A DNA stretch of 63,731 nucleotides, the filler included, from Octopus bimaculoides (Eukaryota), in assembly GCF_001194135.2 (NCBI RefSeq). It is 5 parts of 5 records of this genome, joined end to end, with 100 filler letters (N's around TTAATTAATTAA, not from the genome) between each part and the next. Parts side by side here need not be neighbours in the genome. Positions count along the whole stretch, not along the records: positions 32,930 to 59,916 come from NC_068987.1; 4 more parts are not named here. The stretch is one strand, 5' to 3'. Position 1 is the stretch's first letter; each line of letters starts with the position of its first letter. The notes beneath the pieces were generated by a model. It saw only the letters and a program-made list of their open reading frames with translations. It did not search any database and was not told the origin of the DNA. Below, in pieces: positions 34,530 through 59,245 of this stretch. A program made the position numbers and the translations under genes.

Positions 34530-34849
34530 CATATATATANNNNNNNNNNNNNNNNNNNNNNNNNNNNNNNNNNNNNNNNNNNNNNNNNNNNNNNNNNNNN
34601 NNNNNNTATATATATATATATGTATGTATGTATGTATGTATATTTTGTCAGTGAACAGGTCGCGGTCTCAAAGCGACGAAAATATTTTGACAAATTAAAT
34701 TTAAATGTTGAAGTGAATCTGACGGCTTTTGTGTGTTATTTTAAATGGCTTATAAACACCTTCCACGCTGCAATTATATATATATATATACATAAATACA
34801 TACGTACCTACATTCATGCGTAAATACATACATACATATATAAATACAA

Positions 34850-35141: not shown

Positions 35142-35712
35142 CACTGGTTCAAATCCACTGCTTCATTGGTTAAATATCAAACCAACTACCAAATTGGTTG
35201 TTTTTTTAAAGAGTGGATTTTTATACATTTTTTTAAAATCTATGGGTCCCTTTGATTACTATTTTACCCTGGTGGACCCTCATAGCCATTCGATGATTAA
35301 AAACTAGTTTTATAGGAACTTCTTGCAACATTCCAATTTTGTTTGCGCACACTAACTTGTAGGCGGAACTATGTAAAATGTTTGAGAAAGAAATGTAACT
35401 GTTTCTTTCAGTACATACATAGCACAACTTTTTAGAGGCCCTTAATAAGCTACTGTGGATCCCAAATATACTATTTTGTTGCGTAGACCCCCAACAATTT
35501 TATATGGACCTTTAGATGCCATAAATAAAAGGTCATAGTAAGAAACGTAGCTGTTTTTTGCAAACATACCAATACGTACACCGAAAGGAAAATCTTTTTA
35601 GAGGCCCTTAAAATACTATTGTAGATCCCCAATTCATTATTTTGTAGCGTGGACCTCCAAAAATCTTAATTGGATCCTCAGGGGCCATATGAATCCCGGT
35701 TGAGGACCACTG
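35142..35712. mobile_element. hAT (Charlie-like) MITE with subterminal repeats
   Basis: Right TIR GGTTGAGGACCACTG (reverse complement CAGTGGTCCTCAACC). Possible left TIR CACTGGTTCAAATCC. Internal direct repeat TTTAGAGGCCCTTAA...GGA(T)CC at about 35430 and 35597. Confidence 0.55.
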
Positions 35713-36111: not shown

Positions 36112-36335
36112 GCAGAATCGTTAGCACGCCTGGCGAAATGCTTAGCGGTGTTTCGTCTGCTGTTACGTTCTGAGTTCAAACTCCGCTGAGGTCGATTTGC
36201 CTTTCATACTTGTGGCGTCGATTAAATAAGCACCAGTTACGCGCTGAGGTCGATGTAATCGACTTAAACCATTGGTCTGTCCTTGTTTGTTCCCTCTATG
36301 TTTAGCCCCCCCTTCTGGACAATAATGAAATAAAT
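36112..36335 (+). mobile_element. SINE family B head and core with an alternative tail
   Basis: GCAGAATCGTTAGCACGCCTGGCGAAATGCTTAGCGG...GAGTTCAAACTCCGC...GTCGATGTAATCGACTT, then TTGGTCTGTCCTTGTTTGTTCCCTCTATGTTTAGCCCC. CpGs are retained. Confidence 0.8.
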
Positions 36336-37895: not shown

Positions 37896-39369
37896 TTATG
37901 ACAGCTTCATTCATGTATATATCCAATATATCTGTCGCATTTTGTCTACGTGCGTTGTAATGCAAAATAAAAATGATCAATAATTTTATGTCTTTGGGAA
38001 AATCCTAATTTATGTGACTACAATATATTATTTTGTAAACTAGAATTTAGTATATGTGTGATTCTATGTTTATTTACCTATAAAAGGGCATAATTGTTCA
38101 TGTGTATTCCAATATAAATCAACCATAGTCTACCTCTGTGATAAAAGTAGCATTAAAAAATGATCAATAATTCTATAACTTTAGTAAAAACCACTTAGTT
38201 CAGTATATTTTTGTGTATTAGTATTAAGTATATTAAGATTATAATGTCCATTGCGTGTTTGTATTTCATATTTTAGGGTCATGCACTGAAATACAGCACA
38301 TTACTTCAACTCAATTTATATAGGTTAAATGACTTTGTTAGTATGGTCCATTATTCAACAATATTTTATGGGTTTCCAATAGGAAACATCGAATTATATG
38401 CGCGTTTCGGTATCCAACATTATTCGGCTAACGGCATAGTTTACATCTAAATAAGTCTGAATAATTTAGAGTTTGAAAAAGTAAAGTCTGCTCTAAATTG
38501 AAATGTTTGAGTTTAGTAAAAGAAATCAGAAAATATTTAATGAGAATAGTAGATTCAATATTTCTTAACTCTGAGGAAATAATATATAAAATTATACGAA
38601 AATTAATGGCACTAGTTTGAAACTAAAAACATTAATCTTCCTTGAGAAGAACTATTTACGCTAATATATTTTTATTTGAAATATATCACAATATCATATT
38701 CATGATGGCGTAGGTATCAAATAAAGGTATAGAAATTCTTTAAAATATTATAANNNNNNNNNNNNNNNNNNNNNNNNNNNNNNNNNNNNNNNNNNNNNNN
38801 NNNNNNNNNNNNNNNNNNNNNNNNNNNNNNNNNNNNNNNNNNNNNNNNNNNNNNNNNNNNNNNNNNNNNNNNNNNNNNNNNNNNNNNNNNNNNNNNNNNN
38901 NNNNNNNNNNNNNNNNNNNNNNNNNNNNNNNNNNNNNNNNNNNNNNNNNNNNNNNNNNNNNNNNNNNNNNNNNNNNNNNNNNNNNNNNNNNNNNNNNNNN
39001 NNNNNNNNNNNNNNNNNNNNNNNNNNNNNNNNNNNNNNNNNNNNNNNNNNNNNNNNNNNNNNNNNNNNNNNNNNNNNNNNNNNNNNNNNNNNNNNNNNNN
39101 NNNNNNNNNNNNNNNNNNNNNNNNNNNNNNNNNNNNNNNNNNNNNNNNNNNNNNNNNNNNNNNNNNNNNNNNNNNNNNNNNNNNNNNNNNNNNNNNNNNN
39201 NNNNNNNNNNNNNNNNNNNNNNNNNNNNNNNNNNNNNNNNNNNNNNNNNNNNNNNNNNNNNNNNNNNNNNNNNNNNNNATATCACTAGTTCTTAATCTAG
39301 TGAACACTAACTGTGTGGAAGACACGAACATGAAGAAATTAAAATTAAACATATGTAGCCTTATGCCTA

Positions 39370-39779
39370 GCAGCCCAAGCAGGAGAACCCAGTCATGGCT
39401 GACAGATAATTTCTGAGACCACATCAGCCCTAACATCTGGCCACCCAAATCTCCGGACTACACACCCTTTGATTATTATGCCTGGGACGCAGTTGGTCAC
39501 GAGGTCACGAAAATTCCTTGGAATCGACAAGATGAACTGAAGGCAAGAATTAAGGTAACATTCACCAACTTAAACAAGATCATCCAGTAGATGTGCAAAA
39601 TATTTCGAAGTCATCTGGAGACCGAGTTTCAAACCAATGGCAAATTTATTAAATGAATTTACTCTTTAGTATTTCAAGATATTTCTATGCAATTTTGGTA
39701 AATGTATCTGCTAAAATGAGAAAATAGTGTTATTTTCCTTTTTGAGTAATTTAGACGACAATATATTCACCGCATCCTG
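39370..39779 (+). mobile_element. maT/DD37D-like transposon 3' end, same family as 8511-9378
   Basis: SRRTQSWLTDNF*DHISPNIWPPKSPDYTPFDYYAWDAV...DELKARI..FTNLNK..FRSHLE...NGKFIK*. The 3' UTR and TIR (..CACCGCATCCTG|TA) are collinear with the reverse complement of 8513-8670. Confidence 0.85.
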
Positions 39780-47620: not shown

Positions 47621-49421
47621 TATGTCCAAGTTATTTATTATGTTATATAATTTCTAGCCCGATATATCTGTTTCATGTTAGCTGAAAGGGAAACGTATCA
47701 GAAATACGCCAGAAAATTTCAGTATAATCACACTACAGACTGCTTAGGTGTGGATTGCAAATTTCAGAACTTCCTGGCATAATGCCACGCATCATGAAAT
47801 AATAGAACTACTCAACATGTATCATGTCACTTACAAAAGCGATAATATCTCTGACACCGGCCATATTGATTAGAGCATTGACTAAAAATCGAGTGAGAAA
47901 TAATGTGCAAATTTTTTCAAGTTCTGCTCTTCTTACGACATGAACTACAGAATATTTGGCTTACGTTAAAGTTGTGCATCATTCTCCTGAATTCGCTCAC
48001 GTAATTTGACAAATAAAAGAGTTTTAAATTTGTGTTAGGAGAGAACTCGTGGTGTATCTGAATAGTTTGTGGAAGAAATTGTGTGAGGTTATGAACAGTG
48101 GATGTATCACATCGAACTGGGGTATGAAATGGAAATGTCAGCATTCCCCTATCAGGAAATTTTCAAATCTGGAGAGGTTATGCCGACAGTGCTTCAGTGG
48201 TTTATTTTAGGACGGGATGTGATGGTTCGTGGGGACCAATTCATTATTAGGATCTAACAGTAAACTGTTATTTGAATTGCAATGCGCTTTGCTGCAAGGT
48301 GACGCCAGTACTTTCATGCAAATGCTGACTACTCTAGAGACACGCTGTGGTATTGTAAGACCATTTTGTTCCCAAAATGTTGCTCAATCCATTAAAATCC
48401 ACTGGGAATTGAAATTCGAGAATTTGAAGATTACTTCATATAATTCTACTCTTGCCATTATCGTTCATTTCGGATTCACCTTCCGAAGCCTTCAATTTAC
48501 CGCAACTCAAGATCCAAAGGTAGCATGTAGACTTCGTCATAATTTAGCTGAAATATATATATATTACAAATAACGGGAATATATTGAAAACAGAGGTAGT
48601 GGTATATCAAGAATTATATACTTGTAATAATAAATATATAAAAAAAAAATATTTTATATGGTGGCGCCTCAGCATGGCCACTAACTTTGGCTGAAATAAG
48701 TGAATATAAAAATATTACGAAAAATAGGTCACTGGTCATTATAGTTTACCGAGCAAATGAAAGCAGAATTTTATCAACAACATCAAAAGCAAATATTACA
48801 ACGCGATCATCATTATCAGTTGTATGATCAAGGAAAACAGCATCACCTAATCATTAACTTTACATTGACAACAACAAAAGCAACAACAGCAAAATAAACA
48901 AAAACAGCGAATAAAACAAAATACAGCACGAATTATTTTATTTTCAGGTATATACATTCATCGTCGTGAATAGAGAGAGACGACGATTAATGATGCACGT
49001 ACAACTAATTTCCCGTCAATAGGAAAGATAATTACAAGTGCAATGCAGATAAAAGGATGACACCCCCTTTTTATAACACAATTTAAAATATCCAATTATG
49101 ATTCTGCGGCTGAGGAAAAGTTCCTACACTTTTGTTTGGATTCAATTTCCATCGCACTAATATGAAGTTTTACTTCAGATACTAGAACTTTCTCATATAA
49201 TCATTCTATTTCTGTACATACATATACACACACGCATATATAAATGTCTGTCTGTAGGTGTACGCGTGAGTATTCATGCTTATATATGTACATACATATA
49301 TAAATATATAAGTAAATTCAAAAAAGGATAAAACTCTTTTACAATAATTTTATCAAGAAGCCAGTGTGTAAAAAAATTCATAAGGGAAATTTCTATTCCC
49401 AAGAATATAATTATTCGTTTA

Positions 49422-49592
49422 TATTTATATAAAGGGCATTATTACAGAAAAATAATAATGCCACACAGTGGACTTCTCAAAATAACCACATTTAGTACCT
49501 AATGCGAGGATTATGGTACTAAATGTGGTTATTTTGAGAAGTCCACTATGAGGCATTATTATTTTTCTGTAATAATGCCCTTTATATAAATA
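49422..49592. repeat. 171-bp foldback palindrome (MITE-like)
   Basis: Arms 49422-49499 and 49515-49592 are complementary except for a small internal mismatch; short loop around GCGAGG; TA-rich flanks. Confidence 0.85.
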
Positions 49593-49847
49593 AATAAATA
49601 CATATATATATACAAACGCTGGTCAGTAGGTAGGTAGGTGCTTATGTATTTATGCATGTATGTGTGTATGTATGTATGTGTATAGCAGCGGTGAAATGAA
49701 GATTCAAATACATTTATCGAATTAGATATATTAGATATGTACACAATCCATTAAGAAGCGTACAATAATATTCACCGAAAGATTACATTCCAGGCTTTTA
49801 GCTTAGATGGCTACTCAACAGGTACACTTCTGACAGCATAAATATTG

Positions 49848-50258
49848 TTTTCTATTCGAGGAACATGGCCCGAAATTTTGGGGAAGGTAGCCGGTCGATT
49901 AGATCTATCCCAGTACGCAAATGGTACTTAATTTATCAACCCTGAAAGAATGAAAGGCAAAGTCGGCCTCGGCGGAATTGAATTTGAACTCAGAACGTAA
50001 AGACAGACGAAATACCACAAGGCATTTTACCCGGTGTGCTAACGTTTCTGCCAGCTCGCCACTTTAAAATATTCTTTTCTGCTCAAGTCACAAAACCAGT
50101 CGATTAGGTCTATCCCAGTACTCAACTGGTACTTAATTTATCGACCCCGAAAGGATAAAAGGTAAAGTCGACCTCGGTGGAACTTGAAAGTAAAGACAGA
50201 AGAAATACATCTCAGCATTTCGCCCGGCGTGCTAACGTTTCAGCCAGTTTGCCGCTTT
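49848..50258 (-). mobile_element. Tandem pair of family B SINEs flanked by a 17-bp direct repeat
   Basis: Two B monomers (about 49848-50070 and 50074-50258). TGACAGCATAAATATTG occurs at 49831-49847 and 50259-50275. Confidence 0.85.
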
Positions 50259-51070: not shown

Positions 51071-51718
51071 AAGACTGTTCTGGTTGTTATTACTGAGAAT
51101 AGTCTTAAATCTTTCTTTAATAAGATTTAAGTTAATAATGGACATGACTGAATGCGACGGATGGATTTAATATTTTGATTCCTTTCATCGACAAAGGACA
51201 GTAACAGTTGTATCCTAAGAATACTGCTATAACAGAAATGAAATAAAATCATAGTTATATTGGGAATAGACGTGGAAGAAGAATATCTTATATTTAAAAA
51301 AATATCCACACGCTATTTCTTGTTAGTCATAAAACGTCACTTCATCAATCTTAAGTACTACTCTGGACGAAGCATATTATGTCATTTACTGTGAATAAAG
51401 GAATGAATAAATGAATACTTAATTGATTAAAGTGATATTTCTTCGTACTGTTATCTCTTATTAATTATTTACTTGCTATTTAAAGATATATATTCGAATT
51501 TAAATAGAAAATCTTTTACAAGGCGAGCATGTGTTACATAATGGAAAAAAATGTTTAAGTCATTTCATGTTTCGCAGAAAATGCATAGGATGTACGACTC
51601 GTCTTCAACTACCATGCATTTATAAATACCCATTTCTATATGGATGACGTATATAAGTATACACATATATACATGCATACATATATGTATATATGCATAT
51701 TTTTACACATGCACACAC

Positions 51719-51875
51719 ACAAACGTTTCTGCTACGATTCAGTGCACGCTGCAAAATGTTGCACCTTGGCGTGCATTCTGGTGTTAATTGCCGCATCTTT
51801 TTTCCAAAATATTTGGGTTGGACTTATATTTAGTTCAGATGGAAGCTGAAATGCAGTTAATATTACCTAGAAGCA
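51719..51875 (+). repeat. Left arm of a 157-bp inverted repeat
   Basis: Reverse complement of 52729-52885; 3 mismatches counted by eye. Confidence 0.9.
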
Positions 51876-52728
51876 CACACATACATCTCCCTCCTTTACT
51901 CTCTCTCCCTTTGCTCACGCGTGACCATCGTCTATCTTTCTTTTCATCACGTGCTCATCTTTCTTTCATTTCAGGGCTGTCATACAGGCTAGACGCATCC
52001 TATCTACCTCTCTCTTCTATCATTTCTCTTGTCAAAGAAAATATTTCTCCAGCGTTCGTTATTTTACCCGCGTTCTGGTCTAACAACCCTACATGTTTGT
52101 TTTCGTTCAGTCTCCTTGTATGTCCCCACTGTCGTTCTTGTTCCCAACTTTGACCCTCCATAAATTCCAAATTTTATTTTGGTATTTATGGGAGTAACTG
52201 CCTTCGAAGGCTCATATTGTCGTTCAGTACCCAAAATGAGGAGTAGATAGGCAACCGACACATGACGAAAGGTCGTTCTGTATGTTACTTGTCCTATTTT
52301 TCATATGTTTCTCTCGTTGTGTGCGTATTCAACTCATTTGTTTTCATATTTCATGTTGTTTATTGTTTGTGATGTATTGTGCCGATATGTTCATATATAT
52401 ACACAGGTAAATTTGCAAATTTGGCTGGTAAGAACATACAATCTTATCGGGCACCGTATTTGCTTTTAGAGGTTGATAATACTGGCTAACCTCAGTGAGT
52501 ATAGAAACACTCTAATTAGTTTATTTCACTATTCTCAGTAGATCTTCACATTGGTGAACCCATATGTCTCTTCAGAGACTGCATGTTGTCGGTCGAGAAG
52601 ACACATATATCCAGTTTTATTCTGTAGTTAATCACATCTTACCATTCCTGTACCTAGATATCTTTCTACAGCAAATAAGTGAACACTGCAAAATTTTGAA
52701 TCTTGGCGTGTATTTTGGCGTTAATTGT

Positions 52729-52885
52729 TGCTTCTAGGTAATATTAACTGCATTTCAGCTTCCATCTGAACTAAATATAAGTCCAACCCAAATATTTTGA
52801 AAAAAAGATGCGGCAATTAACACCAGAATGCACGCCAAGGTGTAACATTTTGCAGCGTGCACTGAATCGCAGCAGAAACGTTTGT
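52729..52885 (-). repeat. Right arm of the 157-bp inverted repeat
   Basis: Paired coordinates sum to 104604. Preceded by a degenerate direct partial copy at about 52684-52735. Confidence 0.9.
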
Positions 52886-53023
52886 AGGTGCAGAAATGGA
52901 AAGACGTGATAACTGTAATTAAAACTGGATATATAAATCTCTGTCCTCCATATTATTAATATATATATATATATGTGTGTATGTGTGAGTGTGTGTTTGT
53001 TTTTGTGTGTGTAAAAAGGTGAG

Positions 53024-53284
53024 CCTAACAGGCCACCTTTCATGCTAAAAAGAGCAGTCAAATCCCAAACCACAGTTAAGAGTAATTTCGAAGGGAATGA
53101 AAAAAAAACATTTTCAATAGTTACCACATCTACCTAGGTTTTGAACATCAATAAACAAATAAAATAATTTGCCATCCGTGTTCTCATCAGCACCGGCGCT
53201 ACAATTAATATATATATATATATATATATATGGGACATTGCTGACAGCGTATGTTCCACCGAAATACGTTATAATTTTTCAAAT
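53024..53284 (-). repeat. Direct repeat copy 1 (LTR-like, carries a hammerhead)
   Basis: Collinear with 53489-53738, roughly 85-90% identical by eye. Confidence 0.9.
53117..53202 (-). ncRNA. Type I hammerhead ribozyme, probably inactivated copy
   Basis: Minus strand: ..GGTG CTGATGA GAACA..TGTTC AAAA CCTAGG TA GATG.. G12 is A (CpG decay; T at 53142), and two helix I pairs near the core, including the closing pair, are G-G. Confidence 0.7.
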
Positions 53285-53488
53285 CCACCGCCAAGCGCAG
53301 TTATAGTCGGCAGCAAATAAAGACGTGTGCTCGTATTCTTCAAAATTACGAAATTGCATTAAGAATATATACATAGGGTAGTAAAAGTAAAGAAATTTTC
53401 TTCGAGTCACCTAGCATGCATTAAAGAGTTAATAGATAACATATTTTTCATATAAATATAGTGTACATTTATATACAAAAGAGCTAAT

Positions 53489-53738
53489 CCTAACAGGCCA
53501 CCTTACATGCTAGAAAGAGCAGTCAAATCCCAAACCACGGTTAAGAATAATTTGGAAGAGGATGAAAAATAAAATCATTTTCAGTAGTTACCGCATGTAC
53601 CTAGGTTTCGAACATCAATGAACAAATAAAATAATTTGGCATCCGTGTTCTCATCAGCATGGGCGCTACAGTTAATATATATTTATGGGACATTGAAGAC
53701 AGCACATGTTCCATCTACATACATTATAATTTTCAAAT
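53489..53738 (-). repeat. Direct repeat copy 2 (LTR-like, carries a hammerhead)
   Basis: Collinear with 53024-53284; bounded by (TATG)n on the right. Confidence 0.9.
53584..53669 (-). ncRNA. Type I hammerhead ribozyme with intact core (predicted cleavage after GUA, between 53598 and 53597)
   Basis: Minus strand: GTAGCGCC-CATG-CTGATGA-GAACA-[cgGATGcCAAATtattttATTTGttCATTga]-TGTTC-GAAA-CCTAGG-TA-CATG-CGGTAACTAC. Helix I CATG/CATG plus CC/GG and GTAG/CTAC; helix II GAACA/TGTTC with extended hairpin; helix III ACC/GGT around TA (palindrome ACCTAGGT). Confidence 0.85.
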
Positions 53739-54631
53739 GTATATATGTATTTATGTATGTATGTATGTATGTATGTATGCATGTATGTATGCATGTATGT
53801 ATGTATTGAGTGTGATGTACAGAAATTGAATATCGAGGGGGAAAATGTCATCAGAATTTTGGAAAAAAATATCTTTTTTATTTCTTCATTATTATTAGCG
53901 CTTTCGTTCGTTATGCGAACTTGTCAAATAAAATTTTGTAAATGTACAAACAGCTTCTTCATTTATATAAAAGATATGTATTTTTTATAGTGTGGGGAAA
54001 AAGCAAACGTATTAATTGCTATGTAATAACACGTATGAATACTGATATTGCTTTACCTCTCCTAGTCTCGACTTTGATTTCTGCATAACCCTTGCTAGAA
54101 ATATAGCTTCTGAGATAAGTCAATCTATCTATGTGCTCGACTTCATCTCATCGGACATTAACAAGTTCTACTTAATCAACACAGATTGACACGATTTTAG
54201 TAATTTCAGCGTTAATCCGTAGCCTTGCTTTTGTCCTCAACGTGAATAGCCTGCACCGTATATATATCAGAACTTGCAAAATCCAAATCTGTCAATCTAT
54301 GTAGTACTCTAATTACACCAAAAATGGCGATACCCAGTTCCTAGTGCATTCTCATCATAAGGAATAGAAACGATAATTATTCGTTACTTCCATCAAATAA
54401 AGTAGTAACAGCCTATCATACCTCTCAATATATAATAGAATTATGCATTCGTTCAAAATGACAGTGAAAAGAAATTAATTTCATCTGTAACTTCAACTTC
54501 ATTATTTATACATTAGCCATTTCACATCTACCGAAAACAAATCAACGCTTCTACTGACGCGGTATTCACACACTTATTGAAATTAATAAAAACACTATTT
54601 ACAAATTGATGTACTTATACTTTACATATTA

Positions 54632-54752
54632 TTTTCTACTAGGCCCGAAATTTTGGGGGAGGGGGCCAGTCCATTAGATCGACGCCAGTACGCAACTAGT
54701 ACATAATTTTTCGACCCGGAAAGGATGAAAAGCAAAGTCGACCTTGGCGGAA
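54632..54752 (-). mobile_element. SINE family B, 5'-truncated
   Basis: TTTTCTACTAGGCCCGAAATTTTGGGGGAGGGGGCCAGTC...GAAAGGATGAAAAGCAAAGTCGACCTTGGCGGAA. Confidence 0.8.
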
Positions 54753-54832
54753 TGTTATAATTTACATATTAATATTCTTTTAATATTCTTGACTCGACTA
54801 CAAAGATTATATACAAAAAAATCGATGACACA

Positions 54833-54869
<37 letters not shown>

Positions 54870-55109
54870 NNNNNNNNNNNNNNNNNNNNNNNNNNNNNNN
54901 NNNNNNNNNNNNNNNNNNNNNNNNNNNNNNNNNNNNNNNNNNNNNNNNNNNNNNNNNNNNNNNNNNNNNNNNNNNNNNNNNNNNNNNNNNNNNNNNNNNN
55001 NNNNNNNNNNNNNNNNNNNNNNNNNNNNNNNNNNNNNNNNNNNNNNNNNNNNNNNNNNNNNNNNNNNNNNNNNNNNNNNNNNNNNNNNNNNNNNNNNNNN
55101 NTTCTTCAC

Positions 55110-55820: not shown

Positions 55821-57399
55821 TTCTTTTTAAAATATTTAAGTATCGATTATAGTTTTACTTCGAATTCCCTGCAGAGAAAAACTATGACTTAACTATACCA
55901 ATTCTAAGGACATACATTACTTGCTAAATATATACTACTGAATACCAAGAAGAACAATGGAAGCGAAAAGTGAAAATAAATATCTTCACGTAGGATATAG
56001 AGGTTAGCAGGACTAGCCTCAGGAAGTATTGAGGCAAGAAAAAGGAAGAATTCTTTGAAAAACTAAATTAAAATTTCATTGTTTAATCATATGTGTGTGC
56101 TTGCATGAAACACACACACACGCACATATATACATGAGTGTGTTTACAGGAATGCACGTATAATTGTATTCGTGTGTATATATTTTTATATAGATGCATA
56201 TACACATACGCCCACACACGCCCACACACGCCCACACACGCCCACATACGAACCCCCACCACCCCACACACAAACACACACTCACACACATATATATATA
56301 CTTCTAATTGTTGTTTCTCTTGTCCGCCTTTGTGTCGTCTATCTGTCCGAACGTGTTAATGCCTCTACTGCGTTTTTGTTCCATTTATNNNNNNNNNNNN
56401 NNNNNNNNNNNNNNNNNNNNNNNNNNNNNNNNNNNNNNNNNNNNNNNNNNNNNNNNNNNNNNNNNNNNNNNNNNNNNNNNNNNNNNNNNNNNNNNNNNNN
56501 NNNNNNNNNNNNNNNNNNNNNNNNNNNNNNNNNNNNNNNNNNNNNNNNNNNNNNNNNNNNNNNNNNNNNNNNNNNNNNNNNNNNNNNNNNNNNNNNNNNN
56601 NNNNNNNNNNNNNNNNNNNNNNNNNNNNNNNNNNNNNNNNNNNNNNNNNNNNNNNNNNNNNNNNNNNNNNNNNNNNNNNNNNNNNNNNNNNNNNNNNNNN
56701 NNNNNNNNNNNNNNNNNNNNNNNNNNNNNNNNNNNNNNNNNNNNNNNNNNNNNNNNNNNNNNNNNNNNNNNNNNNNNNNNNNNNNNNNNNNNNNNNNNNN
56801 NNNNNNNNNNNNNNNNNNNNNNNNNNNNNNNNNNNNNNNNNNNNNNNNNNNNNNNNNNNNNNNNNNNNNNNNNNNNNNNNNNNNNNNNNNNNNNNNNNNN
56901 NNNNNNNNNNNNNNNNNNNNNNNNNNNNNNNNNNNNNNNNNNNNNNNNNNNNNNNNNNNNNNNNNNNNNNNNNNNNNNNNNNNNNNNNNNNNNNNNNNNN
57001 NNNNNNNNNNNNNNNNNNNNNNNNNNNNNNNNNNNNNNNNNNNNNNNNNNNNNNNNNNNNNNNNNNNCTAGTTCTGTTGCCGTGTGCGTATTTGCGTGTT
57101 TATATGTAAGCGGAGGTGTTCAATATTGCCAGTGTAGCCAATATGTTGAAACTGTCATTACGTGAAACTTTTACCATGTATTTTGATCAGTACATATAAA
57201 CATATTCATATATATAGCTCATATTTTAAAGCTGGTGTCTACAGTTGAGTTTTCCAGCTTAGTTTGATGTCTGAAATGTTGAAGTTTATTTATCAATAAT
57301 TTACATTTTTGTGTCTTCACAAAAGTCAATACTAATGTTTCAAATTTTGTATTGCAATTTTCTATTGATATGAAGTAAGAGTTCTCTGATGAGCAATGC

Positions 57400-59039: not shown

Positions 59040-59245
59040 TTCCAATTTTGACACAGTCACAGCAAGTTCGGGGGAGGAAGTAAGTCGATTATATCGGCCC
59101 TAGTACTCAACTGGTACTTGTTTTATCGACGCCGAATGGTGGAGAAGTAATTCGATATGGGTGGAATTGCAACTGAGAACAAAAACTCGGTCGAAATGCC
59201 GCTAAGCACTTTGCCTGGCGTGTATTGATTCTGCCAGCTCATCAC
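59040..59245 (-). mobile_element. SINE family B
   Basis: GGGGAGGAAGTAAGTCGATT...CAACTGGTACTTGTTTTATCGAC...GAAATGCCGCTAAGCACTTTGCCTGGCG...TTCTGCCAGCTC. Confidence 0.8.

What the first reader, a model, noticed from the sequence alone, without database searches (positions are those of the whole stretch)
53584..53669. Intact type I hammerhead ribozyme on the minus strand
Seen in the sequence: every conserved core residue is present (CUGAUGA, GAAA, cleavage triplet GUA) and all three helices form. Helix I is CATG/CATG, continued by CC/GG and GTAG/CTAC across bulges. Helix II is GAACA/TGTTC, extended into a ~41-nt hairpin. Helix III is 3 bp around a 2-nt loop and is the palindrome ACCUAGGU. Established: type I hammerheads with a palindromic mini-helix III occur in Penelope-like elements and metazoan retrozymes and typically cleave as dimers; those usually have a very short helix II, so the long one here is atypical. 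Inference: this is a self-cleaving RNA in what looks like an octopus genome, cutting between 53598 and 53597. I cannot tell whether this family has been described.
Basis: partly seen in the sequence, partly recalled or inferred. Interest (0 to 1): 0.92.

Follow-up and report, generated by a model that had tools for sequence, protein, structure and literature searches.

The report
Hammerhead ribozyme in decayed retroelement repeat
A complete type I hammerhead self-cleaving RNA motif is really there, but it sits in one arm of an old, partly degraded 726-base repeat element of a kind (retrozyme / Penelope-derived) already known to litter animal genomes, so it is a real but ordinary find.

Summary
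The motif is present exactly as described on the minus strand (53669..53584). It has CUGAUGA, GAAA, a GUA cleavage triplet, a G10.1-C11.1 pair, three helices and the palindrome ACCUAGGU. It was the only hit of my descriptor in the piece. Motifs this good are expected about 2e-4 times in 51 kb.

The motif lies in the first of two direct ~265-nt repeats (53738-53478 and 53284-53013, K2P 0.14). The two cleavage sites are 467 nt apart. The repeats flank 193 nt of non-coding spacer, and microsatellites border the whole element. This is the layout of a metazoan non-LTR retrozyme or a non-autonomous Penelope-like derivative.

The second copy is dead (G12A, two helix I mismatches). Folding predicts a double hammerhead. 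In a read-through transcript the intact core would then act on the second copy's site (53131|53130), not on its own.

No Rfam hammerhead model reports it, even at E<=10 on 96 nt. No relatives could be retrieved, because the collections hold no animal genomes. Family size, covariation and activity are therefore untested. A monomeric helix III is 2 bp plus a CUAG tetraloop, not 3 bp plus a 2-nt loop.

Verdict: a genuine hammerhead-derived motif, a new member of a known kind, probably a relic locus. Interest about 0.25.

The parts
53013..53738 (-). Whole element, layout X-Y-X: direct repeat A, spacer, direct repeat B. It is 726 nt, GC 33.6%, and has no ORF of note.
   Evidence: the repeat finder families D8, D9 and D12. 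Pairwise alignment. blastn finds only these two copies in the piece. GC. ORF lists.
53478..53738 (-). Direct repeat copy A, which carries the sequence-complete hammerhead.
53584..53669 (-). Type I hammerhead motif, copy A (the finding).
53658..53669 (-). Helix I 5' strand: GUAG (outer stem), CG (loop 1 side), CC, CAUG (positions 2.4-2.1).
   Evidence: fold
53651..53657 (-). Core box C3-U4-G5-A6-U7-G8-A9.
53610..53650 (-). Helix II. GAACA/UGUUC (5 bp, G10.1-C11.1), then internal loop CG/GA. It continues as the imperfect hairpin GAUG-C-CAAAU [UAUUUU] AUUUG-UU-CAUU.
53606..53609 (-). Core G12-A13-A14-A15.1.
53599..53606 (-). Helix III palindrome ACCUAGGU. In a monomer it forms 2 bp plus a CUAG tetraloop. 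In a dimer it forms an 8-bp intermolecular helix.
53597..53598 (-). Predicted scissile bond of copy A, between A17 (53598) and C1.1 (53597).
   Evidence: Position follows from the motif. Cleavage was not tested.
53584..53597 (-). Helix I 3' strand: CAUG, bulged C, GG, UAA (loop 1 side), CUAC.
53285..53477 (-). Spacer Y between the two repeats. It is unique in the piece and non-coding.
   Evidence: blastn of Y finds only itself
53013..53284 (-). Direct repeat copy B, 87% identical to A (K2P 0.14).
53117..53202 (-). Degenerate hammerhead, copy B. CUGAUGA (53190-53184) and the palindrome (53139-53132) are kept. G12 is changed to A at 53142. Helix I has G-G mismatches at pairs 1.1-2.1 and 1.4-2.4. 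The GUA triplet is at 53133-53131.
53130..53131 (-). Scissile bond of copy B. In the predicted cis double hammerhead it is served by the intact core of copy A.
   Evidence: the MFE of the 559-nt transcript pairs the two palindromes and pairs A's helix I 5' strand with B's 3' strand
53739..53806 (.). Flanking (ATGT)n/(ACAT)n microsatellite, directly upstream of the element in the ribozyme sense.
52954..53012 (.). Flanking (TA)n-(TG)n compound microsatellite, directly downstream of the element.

Best explanation
The motif is a genuine type I hammerhead ribozyme sequence. It belongs to a small non-coding retroelement of the metazoan non-LTR retrozyme / non-autonomous Penelope-like-element class, present here as an old insertion of about 1.6 units (X-Y-X, 53738..53013, minus strand) in a compound microsatellite.

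How the element class works (established for the class, inferred here):
- Multimeric transcripts fold so that the palindromic helix III segments of two hammerhead copies pair with each other. This forms a double hammerhead with an 8-bp helix III and swapped helix I strands.
- Each core cuts after the GUA of the partner. [quoted passage not shown]
- A host tRNA ligase (RtcB type) circularises this RNA.
- A Penelope-like reverse transcriptase/endonuclease copies it in trans into longer-than-unit cDNA and inserts it, with a preference for microsatellites.

At this particular locus the system is decayed. Copy A keeps every core and helix position. Copy B has G12A and two helix I mismatches. At most one cut is therefore expected. 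It would be either slow monomeric cleavage at 53598|53597, or A's core cutting B's site at 53131|53130 in a read-through transcript. Release of a unit-length RNA from this locus is unlikely.

Shown: the motif, the repeat architecture, B's mutations and the predicted folds. Inferred: catalysis, circularisation, mobilisation by a Penelope-like element, and membership of a multi-copy family.
For: 1. The full core and three helices are present, and this is the only descriptor hit in the piece. Chance expectation is about 2e-4 per piece (plus the analytic estimate).
2. Class-typical features that no descriptor required are also present:
- a G10.1-C11.1 pair;
- a palindromic helix III;
- a helix I of about 6 bp, followed by an internal loop and a closing stem;
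- a short inner helix I (4 bp) with an enlarged helix II, as in PLE hammerheads (PMC4209133).
3. A second hammerhead copy lies 467 nt downstream in a direct repeat, with non-coding spacer between. [quoted passage not shown] It also falls within the 51-972 bp range of retrozyme consensus lengths (bioRxiv 10.64898/2026.07.22.740005).
4. GC is 33%.
5. Both flanks are microsatellites. Microsatellite insertion bias is reported for PLEs (PMC8557442).
6. RNAcofold of two A motifs gives the double hammerhead at -49.8 kcal/mol, against 2 x -18.8 for monomers. The unconstrained MFE of the 559-nt A-to-B transcript pairs the two palindromes and pairs A's helix I 5' strand with B's 3' strand.
7. The would-be 467-nt unit folds somewhat better than shuffles (z = -2.19).
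8. Cephalopod genomes are already known to hold Hammerhead_1 loci and Penelope elements (PMC6962438, PMC8557442).
Against: - No Rfam hammerhead model reports the site, even at E<=10 on 96 nt.
- Only two copies are in hand, and they show no compensatory double substitutions. There are only two G-C to G-U changes, so there is no covariation support.
- The hammerhead is not clearly better conserved than its flanks (90.7% against 81-88%), so there is no sign of constraint.
- No relatives were found by two protein-database searches with ORFs laid over the element. Two metagenome scans and one viral scan for the motif also found nothing. These collections are not expected to hold animal genomes, so this is weak evidence.
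- No Penelope reverse transcriptase or GIY-YIG remnant is visible in the piece.
- No target-site duplication can be read, because the flanks are simple repeats.
- The motif alone does not fold better than shuffles (z = -1.47).
- A 41-nt helix II with an internal loop in place of loop 2 leaves the loop-loop tertiary contacts undefined. Catalytic efficiency is therefore uncertain.
Confidence: 0.72

Rival explanations
1. Truncated or solo remnant of an autonomous Penelope-like element. The two repeats would be pseudo-LTRs, or a partial tandem, left after loss of the RT-endonuclease ORF. It would not be a dedicated non-autonomous retrozyme.
For: - PLE pseudo-LTRs carry type I hammerheads with a palindromic helix III, a short helix I and an enlarged helix II (PMC4209133).
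- PLE insertions form partial tandems and favour microsatellites (PMC8557442).
- Retrozymes themselves appear to derive from pLTRs (bioRxiv 10.64898/2026.07.22.740005), so the two readings shade into each other.
- The microsatellite flanks are seen here.
Against: - Only 193 nt lie between the repeats.
- No RT or GIY-YIG-like ORF fragment is visible in the 27-kb piece. A full six-frame Pfam scan was not run.
- There is no inverted 5'-truncated copy next to the element.
- The unpaired nucleotide between A9 and G10.1 that is typical of PLE minimal hammerheads is absent.
Confidence: 0.15
2. Chance hammerhead-like motif inside an ordinary local tandem duplication. It would have no ribozyme ancestry and no activity.
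For: - Rfam covariance models give nothing.
- The basic descriptor is expected about 20 times per 2.7-Gb genome by chance (analytic estimate, consistent).
- The scan looked at many windows.
- There is no covariation and no excess conservation.
- The fold z-score is -1.47.
Against: - Expectation in this piece is about 2e-4.
- The extra features together push the genome-wide expectation well below one. These are the 8-nt palindromic helix III, the G10.1-C11.1 pair, a closed helix I with loop 1, and a second copy at retrozyme spacing that keeps CUGAUGA and the palindrome.
- The MFE of the two-copy transcript is itself the cis double hammerhead.
Confidence: 0.08
3. Exapted hammerhead that processes a host transcript, for example in an intron or 3' UTR. 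It would act on its own, like the conserved intronic or UTR hammerheads of vertebrates.
For: - Copy A has stayed sequence-complete while copy B decayed.
- Retrozyme copies that overlap exons tend to lie in 3' UTRs (bioRxiv 10.64898/2026.07.22.740005).
Against: - No coding exon or gene was identified in the piece.
- The hammerhead is not clearly more conserved than its flanks.
- A weak 2-bp helix III argues against efficient solo action.
- One surviving copy out of two is compatible with luck. By my rough estimate, the chance of no disruptive hit at about 7% divergence is of the order of 0.1-0.2.
Confidence: 0.05

Closest known systems
Metazoan non-LTR retrozymes (Cervera & de la Pena 2020, PMC7229834; review PMC7761336)
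   Same: - Type I hammerhead.
- Short non-coding direct or tandem repeats: 467 nt between cleavage sites, against 150-450 bp reported (51-972 bp in the 2026 preprint).
- GC below 45%.
- No LTR, PBS or PPT.
- Helix III of 2 bp plus a palindromic tetraloop, as described for invertebrate and HHR_Amex2 motifs.
- Predicted dimeric action.
   Different: - Only about 1.6 units, with one dead ribozyme.
- Family size and circular RNA were not shown.
- Helix II is a 41-nt imperfect hairpin instead of 4 bp plus a small loop 2, so the canonical loop 1-loop 2 contacts cannot be assigned.
- The unit is slightly longer than the 170-400 nt RNAs described.
Minimal hammerheads in pseudo-LTRs of Penelope-like elements (Cervera & de la Pena 2014, PMC4209133; Lunse et al. 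2017, cited in PMC7761336 but not readable here)
   Same: [quoted passage not shown]
- Enlarged helix II.
- G10.1-C11.1 pair.
- Palindromic helix III, implying dimers.
- Location in direct repeats.
- Microsatellite insertion sites (PMC8557442).
   Different: - No RT/GIY-YIG ORF between or near the repeats.
- No unpaired nucleotide between A9 and G10.1.
- Helix III is present (2 bp plus tetraloop) rather than absent.
- The helix II extension is far longer than 7-8 bp.
Amphibian satellite 2 / newt and axolotl hammerheads acting as double hammerheads (Forster et al. 1988, cited in PMC4209133 and PMC7761336; PMC7229834)
   Same: A weak helix III with a palindromic loop. Activity depends on pairing of two tandem copies. 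Repeat unit is about 330-350 bp.
   Different: The amphibian motifs keep conserved loop 1-loop 2 contacts and a 4-bp helix II. They occur in huge tandem arrays.
Rfam Hammerhead_1 (RF00163) loci annotated in the giant squid genome (PMC6962438)
   Same: Type I hammerheads in a cephalopod genome, if this window is indeed from a cephalopod.
   Different: Those 235 loci were found by the Rfam model. The present motif is not reported by any Rfam model. It would therefore have been missed by that kind of annotation.

Membership tests
Hammerhead ribozyme, type I | Conserved core: C3 U4 G5 A6 N7 G8 A9, G12 A13 A14, the A15.1-U16.1 pair, and H17 (not G) at the cleavage site. | tested here: met
   CUGAUGA 53657-53651, GAAA 53609-53606, U16.1 at 53599, A17 at 53598.
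Hammerhead ribozyme, type I | Three helices around the core. Helix I is open-ended; helices II and III are closed. | tested here: met
   Helix I has 4 bp, plus 2 bp, plus a 4-bp closing stem. Helix II has 5 bp plus an extension. Helix III has 2 bp plus a tetraloop. The constrained fold is -17.2 kcal/mol against an MFE of -18.8.
Hammerhead ribozyme, type I | Match to the curated covariance model (Rfam Hammerhead_1 or clan members) at gathering score. | tested here: not met
   No hit at gathering score, none at E<=10 on 451 nt, none at E<=10 on 96 nt. The likely cause is the 31-nt insertion in loop 2, but this is my inference.
Hammerhead ribozyme, type I | Helices supported by covariation among homologues. 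| tested here: inconclusive
   Only two copies are available. There are two G-C to G-U changes, one A-U to G-U change, and no double compensatory change. Copy B breaks two helix I pairs.
Hammerhead ribozyme, type I | Loop 1-loop 2 tertiary contacts of canonical metazoan type I motifs. | tested here: not met
   Loop 2 is replaced by an internal loop (CG/GA) plus a 27-nt hairpin extension. By eye, the loops do not match the canonical metazoan pattern described in PMC4209133. PLE-type variants also lack these contacts (PMC7761336).
Hammerhead ribozyme, type I | Site-specific Mg2+-dependent self-cleavage. | not testable with these tools
   Needs in vitro transcription or mapping of RNA ends.
Metazoan non-LTR retrozyme | Type I hammerheads repeated in direct orientation at a few hundred bp, with non-coding sequence between them. 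| tested here: met
   The two motifs are 467 nt apart (53598 and 53131) in direct repeats of about 265 nt. There is no ORF beyond short spurious ones.
Metazoan non-LTR retrozyme | Low GC (<45-50%) and absence of LTR, PBS and PPT features. | tested here: met
   GC is 33%. No tRNA-like or PBS feature was looked for beyond ARAGORN, which found nothing.
Metazoan non-LTR retrozyme | Multi-copy family in the genome, often in longer tandem arrays. | not testable with these tools
   No animal genome collection is available. There are only two copies in the 27-kb piece. Searches in protein, metagenome and viral collections found nothing.
Metazoan non-LTR retrozyme | Expression as linear and circular unit-length RNA. 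| not testable with these tools
   Needs RNA-seq, northern blots or RNase R.
Penelope-like element (autonomous) | An ORF with a telomerase-like RT and a GIY-YIG endonuclease between pseudo-LTRs. | tested here: not met
   There are 193 nt between the repeats. No ORF >=90 aa with such content, and no suggestive stop-to-stop segment, occurs in the piece. A six-frame Pfam scan of the whole piece was not run.
PLE minimal hammerhead | [quoted passage not shown] | tested here: not met
   A9 (53651) is followed directly by G10.1 (53650), which pairs with C11.1 (53610).
PLE minimal hammerhead | Palindromic 15.2-16.2 positions and loop 3, with a conserved G10.1-C11.1 pair. | tested here: met
   The ACCUAGGU palindrome and the G-C pair at 10.1-11.1.

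The most novel reading that the evidence does not exclude
The motif could represent an uncatalogued cephalopod retrozyme family. Its hammerhead would carry a long structured insertion in helix II and therefore be invisible to Rfam-based annotation. Other loci of the family might still be active, producing abundant circular RNAs of about 470 nt in the animal's tissues.
Probability: 0.2. Interest if true: 0.4.

Novelty: new member of a known kind. Interest (0 to 1): 0.25.

Why it matters
If confirmed, it adds one more lineage and one more structural variant (a long helix II insertion) to the large catalogue of retroelement-borne type I hammerheads in animals. It also illustrates that covariance-model annotation misses such variants.

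It does not open a new question. The class, its dimeric mode of action and its link to Penelope-like elements are all described. The locus itself looks like a relic with only one potentially functional core. The practical value is modest: a seed sequence for finding the family in the source genome and for checking circular RNA data.

Tried and rejected
- **Rfam cmscan.** Three runs (whole piece at gathering score, 451 nt and 96 nt at E<=10) gave no hammerhead. The only hits were microRNA models on the (ATGT)n microsatellite, which I regard as low-complexity artefacts.
- **First motif search.** My pattern was rejected for too wide a gap. The narrower one missed the site because helix II exceeds 38 nt. 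My own descriptor replaced it.
- **Family members through spurious ORFs in the protein collection.**
  - The 37-aa ORF over the ribozyme was too short.
  - The X-padded 43-aa version had no candidates.
  - The 120-aa stop-to-stop frame from copy B had 9 word candidates, none at E<=10.
- **Exact-product look-ups.** Three local ORFs were not on record, so the source organism could not be identified.
- **Collection scans.** The hammerhead-specific pattern found nothing in metagenome and viral contigs. The 20-mer TGATGTTCRAAACCTAGGTA found nothing in metagenomes.
- **Pfam.**
  - A scan of six selected stop-to-stop segments gave nothing above threshold.
  - So no Penelope RT/endonuclease or other gene context was established. 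My impression of a Tc1/mariner-like C-terminus at 39417-39587 remains memory-based only.
- **ARAGORN.** No tRNA-like sequence.
- **Unavailable paper.** Lunse et al. 2017 (PMC5785218) is not held.
- **Rejected idea: selective maintenance of copy A.** Conservation of the motif (90.7%) is not clearly above its flanks (81-88%).

Full report
**Observation.** On the minus strand, 53669..53584 reads GUAG-CG-CC-CAUG / CUGAUGA / GAACA-[31 nt]-UGUUC / GAAA / CC-UA-GG-U-A^ / CAUG-C-GG-UAA-CUAC. All invariant hammerhead positions are present: C3-A9 at 53657-53651, G12-A15.1 at 53609-53606, U16.1 at 53599, and A17 at 53598. So is the near-invariant G10.1-C11.1 pair (53650/53610).

Helix I is 4 bp, continued by CC/GG across a bulged C, then closed by GUAG/CUAC beyond an internal loop (CG/UAA). 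Helix II is 5 bp and continues, after an internal loop CG/GA, into an imperfect AU-rich hairpin, 41 nt in all. The segment A15.1-U16.1 is the perfect palindrome ACCUAGGU.

One detail is wrong. In a monomer, helix III is 2 bp capped by the palindromic tetraloop CUAG. The third C-G pair exists only in a dimer.

**Chance.** A descriptor I wrote requires CUGANGA, GAAA, UH, helix I >=4 bp, helix II >=4 bp and helix III >=3 bp. It finds this site and nothing else on both strands of 32930-59916, even when relaxed. In 68 Mb of first-order Markov sequence with the piece's composition it found one loose hit and none as good as the real one.

My analytic estimate is about 4e-9 per base. That is about 2e-4 for this piece, but about 20 per 2.7-Gb genome. 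The bare motif would therefore not be proof on a genome-wide scan. Requiring the 8-nt palindrome in place of any helix III lowers the expectation about 100-fold. The closed helix I and the G10.1-C11.1 pair lower it further.

Rfam 15 reports no hammerhead family at gathering score, at E<=10 on 451 nt, or at E<=10 on 96 nt. The only weak hits are microRNA models on the neighbouring (ATGT)n microsatellite. I attribute the miss to the 31-nt insertion where the models expect a small loop 2, but I could not test that. The motif alone is not unusually stable (z = -1.47). The hammerhead-constrained fold is 1.6 kcal/mol above the MFE.

The motif is part of a repeat. The repeat finder families D8, D9 and D12, the pairwise alignment and blastn show two direct copies of about 265 nt: A at 53738-53478 and B at 53284-53013. 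They are 87% identical with K2P 0.14. A 193-nt spacer separates them and is unique in the piece. There are no further copies in the 27 kb.

Copy B carries a second hammerhead at 53202-53117. It keeps CUGAUGA and the palindrome. It has G12 changed to A (53142) and G-G mismatches at helix I pairs 1.1-2.1 and 1.4-2.4. G12 is the general base of the reaction (established knowledge), so core B should be essentially dead.

The eight A/B differences within the motif break down as follows:
- three that are disruptive in B;
- two G-C to G-U changes;
- one A-U to G-U change;
- two in bulges.

There is no double compensatory change, so there is no covariation evidence. The motif is not clearly better conserved than its flanks (90.7% against 81-88%).

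The two GUA sites are 467 nt apart. The element (726 nt, GC 33.6%, equal to the background) has only short spurious ORFs. It is bordered directly by (ACAT)n upstream and (AC)n(AT)n downstream. No target-site duplication can be read.

**Folding.** RNAcofold of two copies of motif A gives the classical double hammerhead as its MFE. It has an 8-bp intermolecular helix III, and helix I forms between the 5' strand of one copy and the 3' strand of the other. The energy is -49.8 kcal/mol, against -37.6 for two monomers.

The unconstrained MFE of the 559-nt transcript from A to B pairs palindrome A (53606-53599) with palindrome B (53139-53132). It also pairs A's helix I 5' strand (53669-53659) with B's helix I 3' strand (53117-53129). 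In such a double hammerhead each core cuts the partner's site. On a read-through transcript of this locus, the intact core A would therefore act on 53131|53130, with a G-G mismatch at pair 1.1-2.1.

The 467-nt would-be unit folds moderately better than shuffles (z = -2.19).

**Comparison with what is known.**
- Cervera and de la Pena (PMC4209133) describe metazoan type I hammerheads as having a 1-2 bp helix III capped by a small palindromic loop, which makes them work as dimers.
- The same paper describes Penelope-like-element variants with a short helix I (4-5 bp), a poorly defined loop 1, a larger helix II (7-8 bp), a conserved G10.1-C11.1 pair and palindromic 15.2-16.2 positions.
- PMC7229834 and PMC7761336 describe non-LTR retrozymes. 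These are type I hammerheads in non-coding tandem repeats of 150-450 bp with low GC. They are expressed as circular RNAs after self-cleavage and ligation by a tRNA ligase, and are probably mobilised by Penelope-like elements.
- A 2026 preprint (10.64898/2026.07.22.740005) reports retrozyme consensus lengths of 51-972 bp, mostly a few repeat units, and derivation from pLTRs.
- PLEs favour microsatellite targets (PMC8557442).
- The giant squid genome paper lists 235 Hammerhead_1 loci (PMC6962438).

The present element fits this class in every feature I could test. Three features do not fit: the Rfam score, the missing unpaired base before G10.1, and the unusually long helix II.

**What could not be done.** None of the collections holds animal genomes. 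Attempts to reach family members all found nothing:
- spurious ORFs in the protein collection;
- exact-product look-ups;
- pattern scans of metagenome and viral contigs.

The source organism ('octopus') is unverified. Copy number, covariation, linkage to a Penelope-like element, expression and catalysis all remain open.

**Verdict.** This is a genuine hammerhead-derived motif (confidence about 0.9 that it is not chance). It most likely belongs to a retrozyme or Penelope-derived non-autonomous element (0.72) that is old and half-dead at this locus. It is a new member of a known kind, with a modestly unusual helix II. Interest is 0.25.

Noticed in passing
window 51714-52890: A pair of 162-nt inverted repeats, 97% complementary, encloses 853 nt (arms 51714-51875 and 52729-52890). 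It looks like a young foldback or MITE-like DNA transposon. It ends only about 60 bp from the microsatellite that borders the hammerhead element. Internal stop-to-stop segments gave no Pfam hit.
   Followed up: partly
window 49867-50258, 54642-54753, 59083-59150; inverted copy near 36112-36183: A dispersed repeat family of about 110-200 nt, 72-87% identical (repeat finder D6, D7, D11, I12). Two copies lie in tandem at 49867 and 50072. It is probably a SINE of the host genome. ARAGORN sees no tRNA-like head.
   Followed up: no
window 53613-53603 and 53668-53658, minus strand: The hammerhead segment UGUUCGAAACC matches the RNA polymerase III B-box consensus GGTTCGANNCC at 10 of 11 positions. About 55 nt upstream there is a poor A-box-like TAGCGCCCATG (7 of 11). 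The consensus sequences are recalled from memory. The match could be a coincidence forced by the ribozyme core, or a hint of SINE-like transcription.
   Followed up: no
window 39417-39587 (+), next to the N gap at about 38740-39285: The stop-to-stop frame DHISPNIWPPKSPDYTPFDYYAWDAV... resembles the C-terminal end of Tc1/mariner transposases. This is from memory only. Pfam gave no significant hit.
   Followed up: partly
window 53737-53806 and similar microsatellites: Rfam microRNA models (mir-297, mir-3149, mir-1277, mir-4012) hit the (ATGT)n repeat at E down to 3e-7, far below their gathering scores. These are low-complexity artefacts, not microRNA genes.
   Followed up: yes
window 49405-49609: A 95-nt inverted repeat, 89% complementary, with only 15 nt between the arms. 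It is a long hairpin or a small palindromic element.
   Followed up: no
window 35428-35689: Two direct 96-nt repeats, 78% identical, 166 nt apart start to start. Nature unknown.
   Followed up: no
window 32930-59916: The piece contains 1503 N in several gaps (for example near 34540-34606, 38740-39285, 54870-55100 and 56390-57070). It is also very rich in di- and tetranucleotide microsatellites. This is a gapped draft scaffold, so single-base features deserve a check against raw reads.
   Followed up: no
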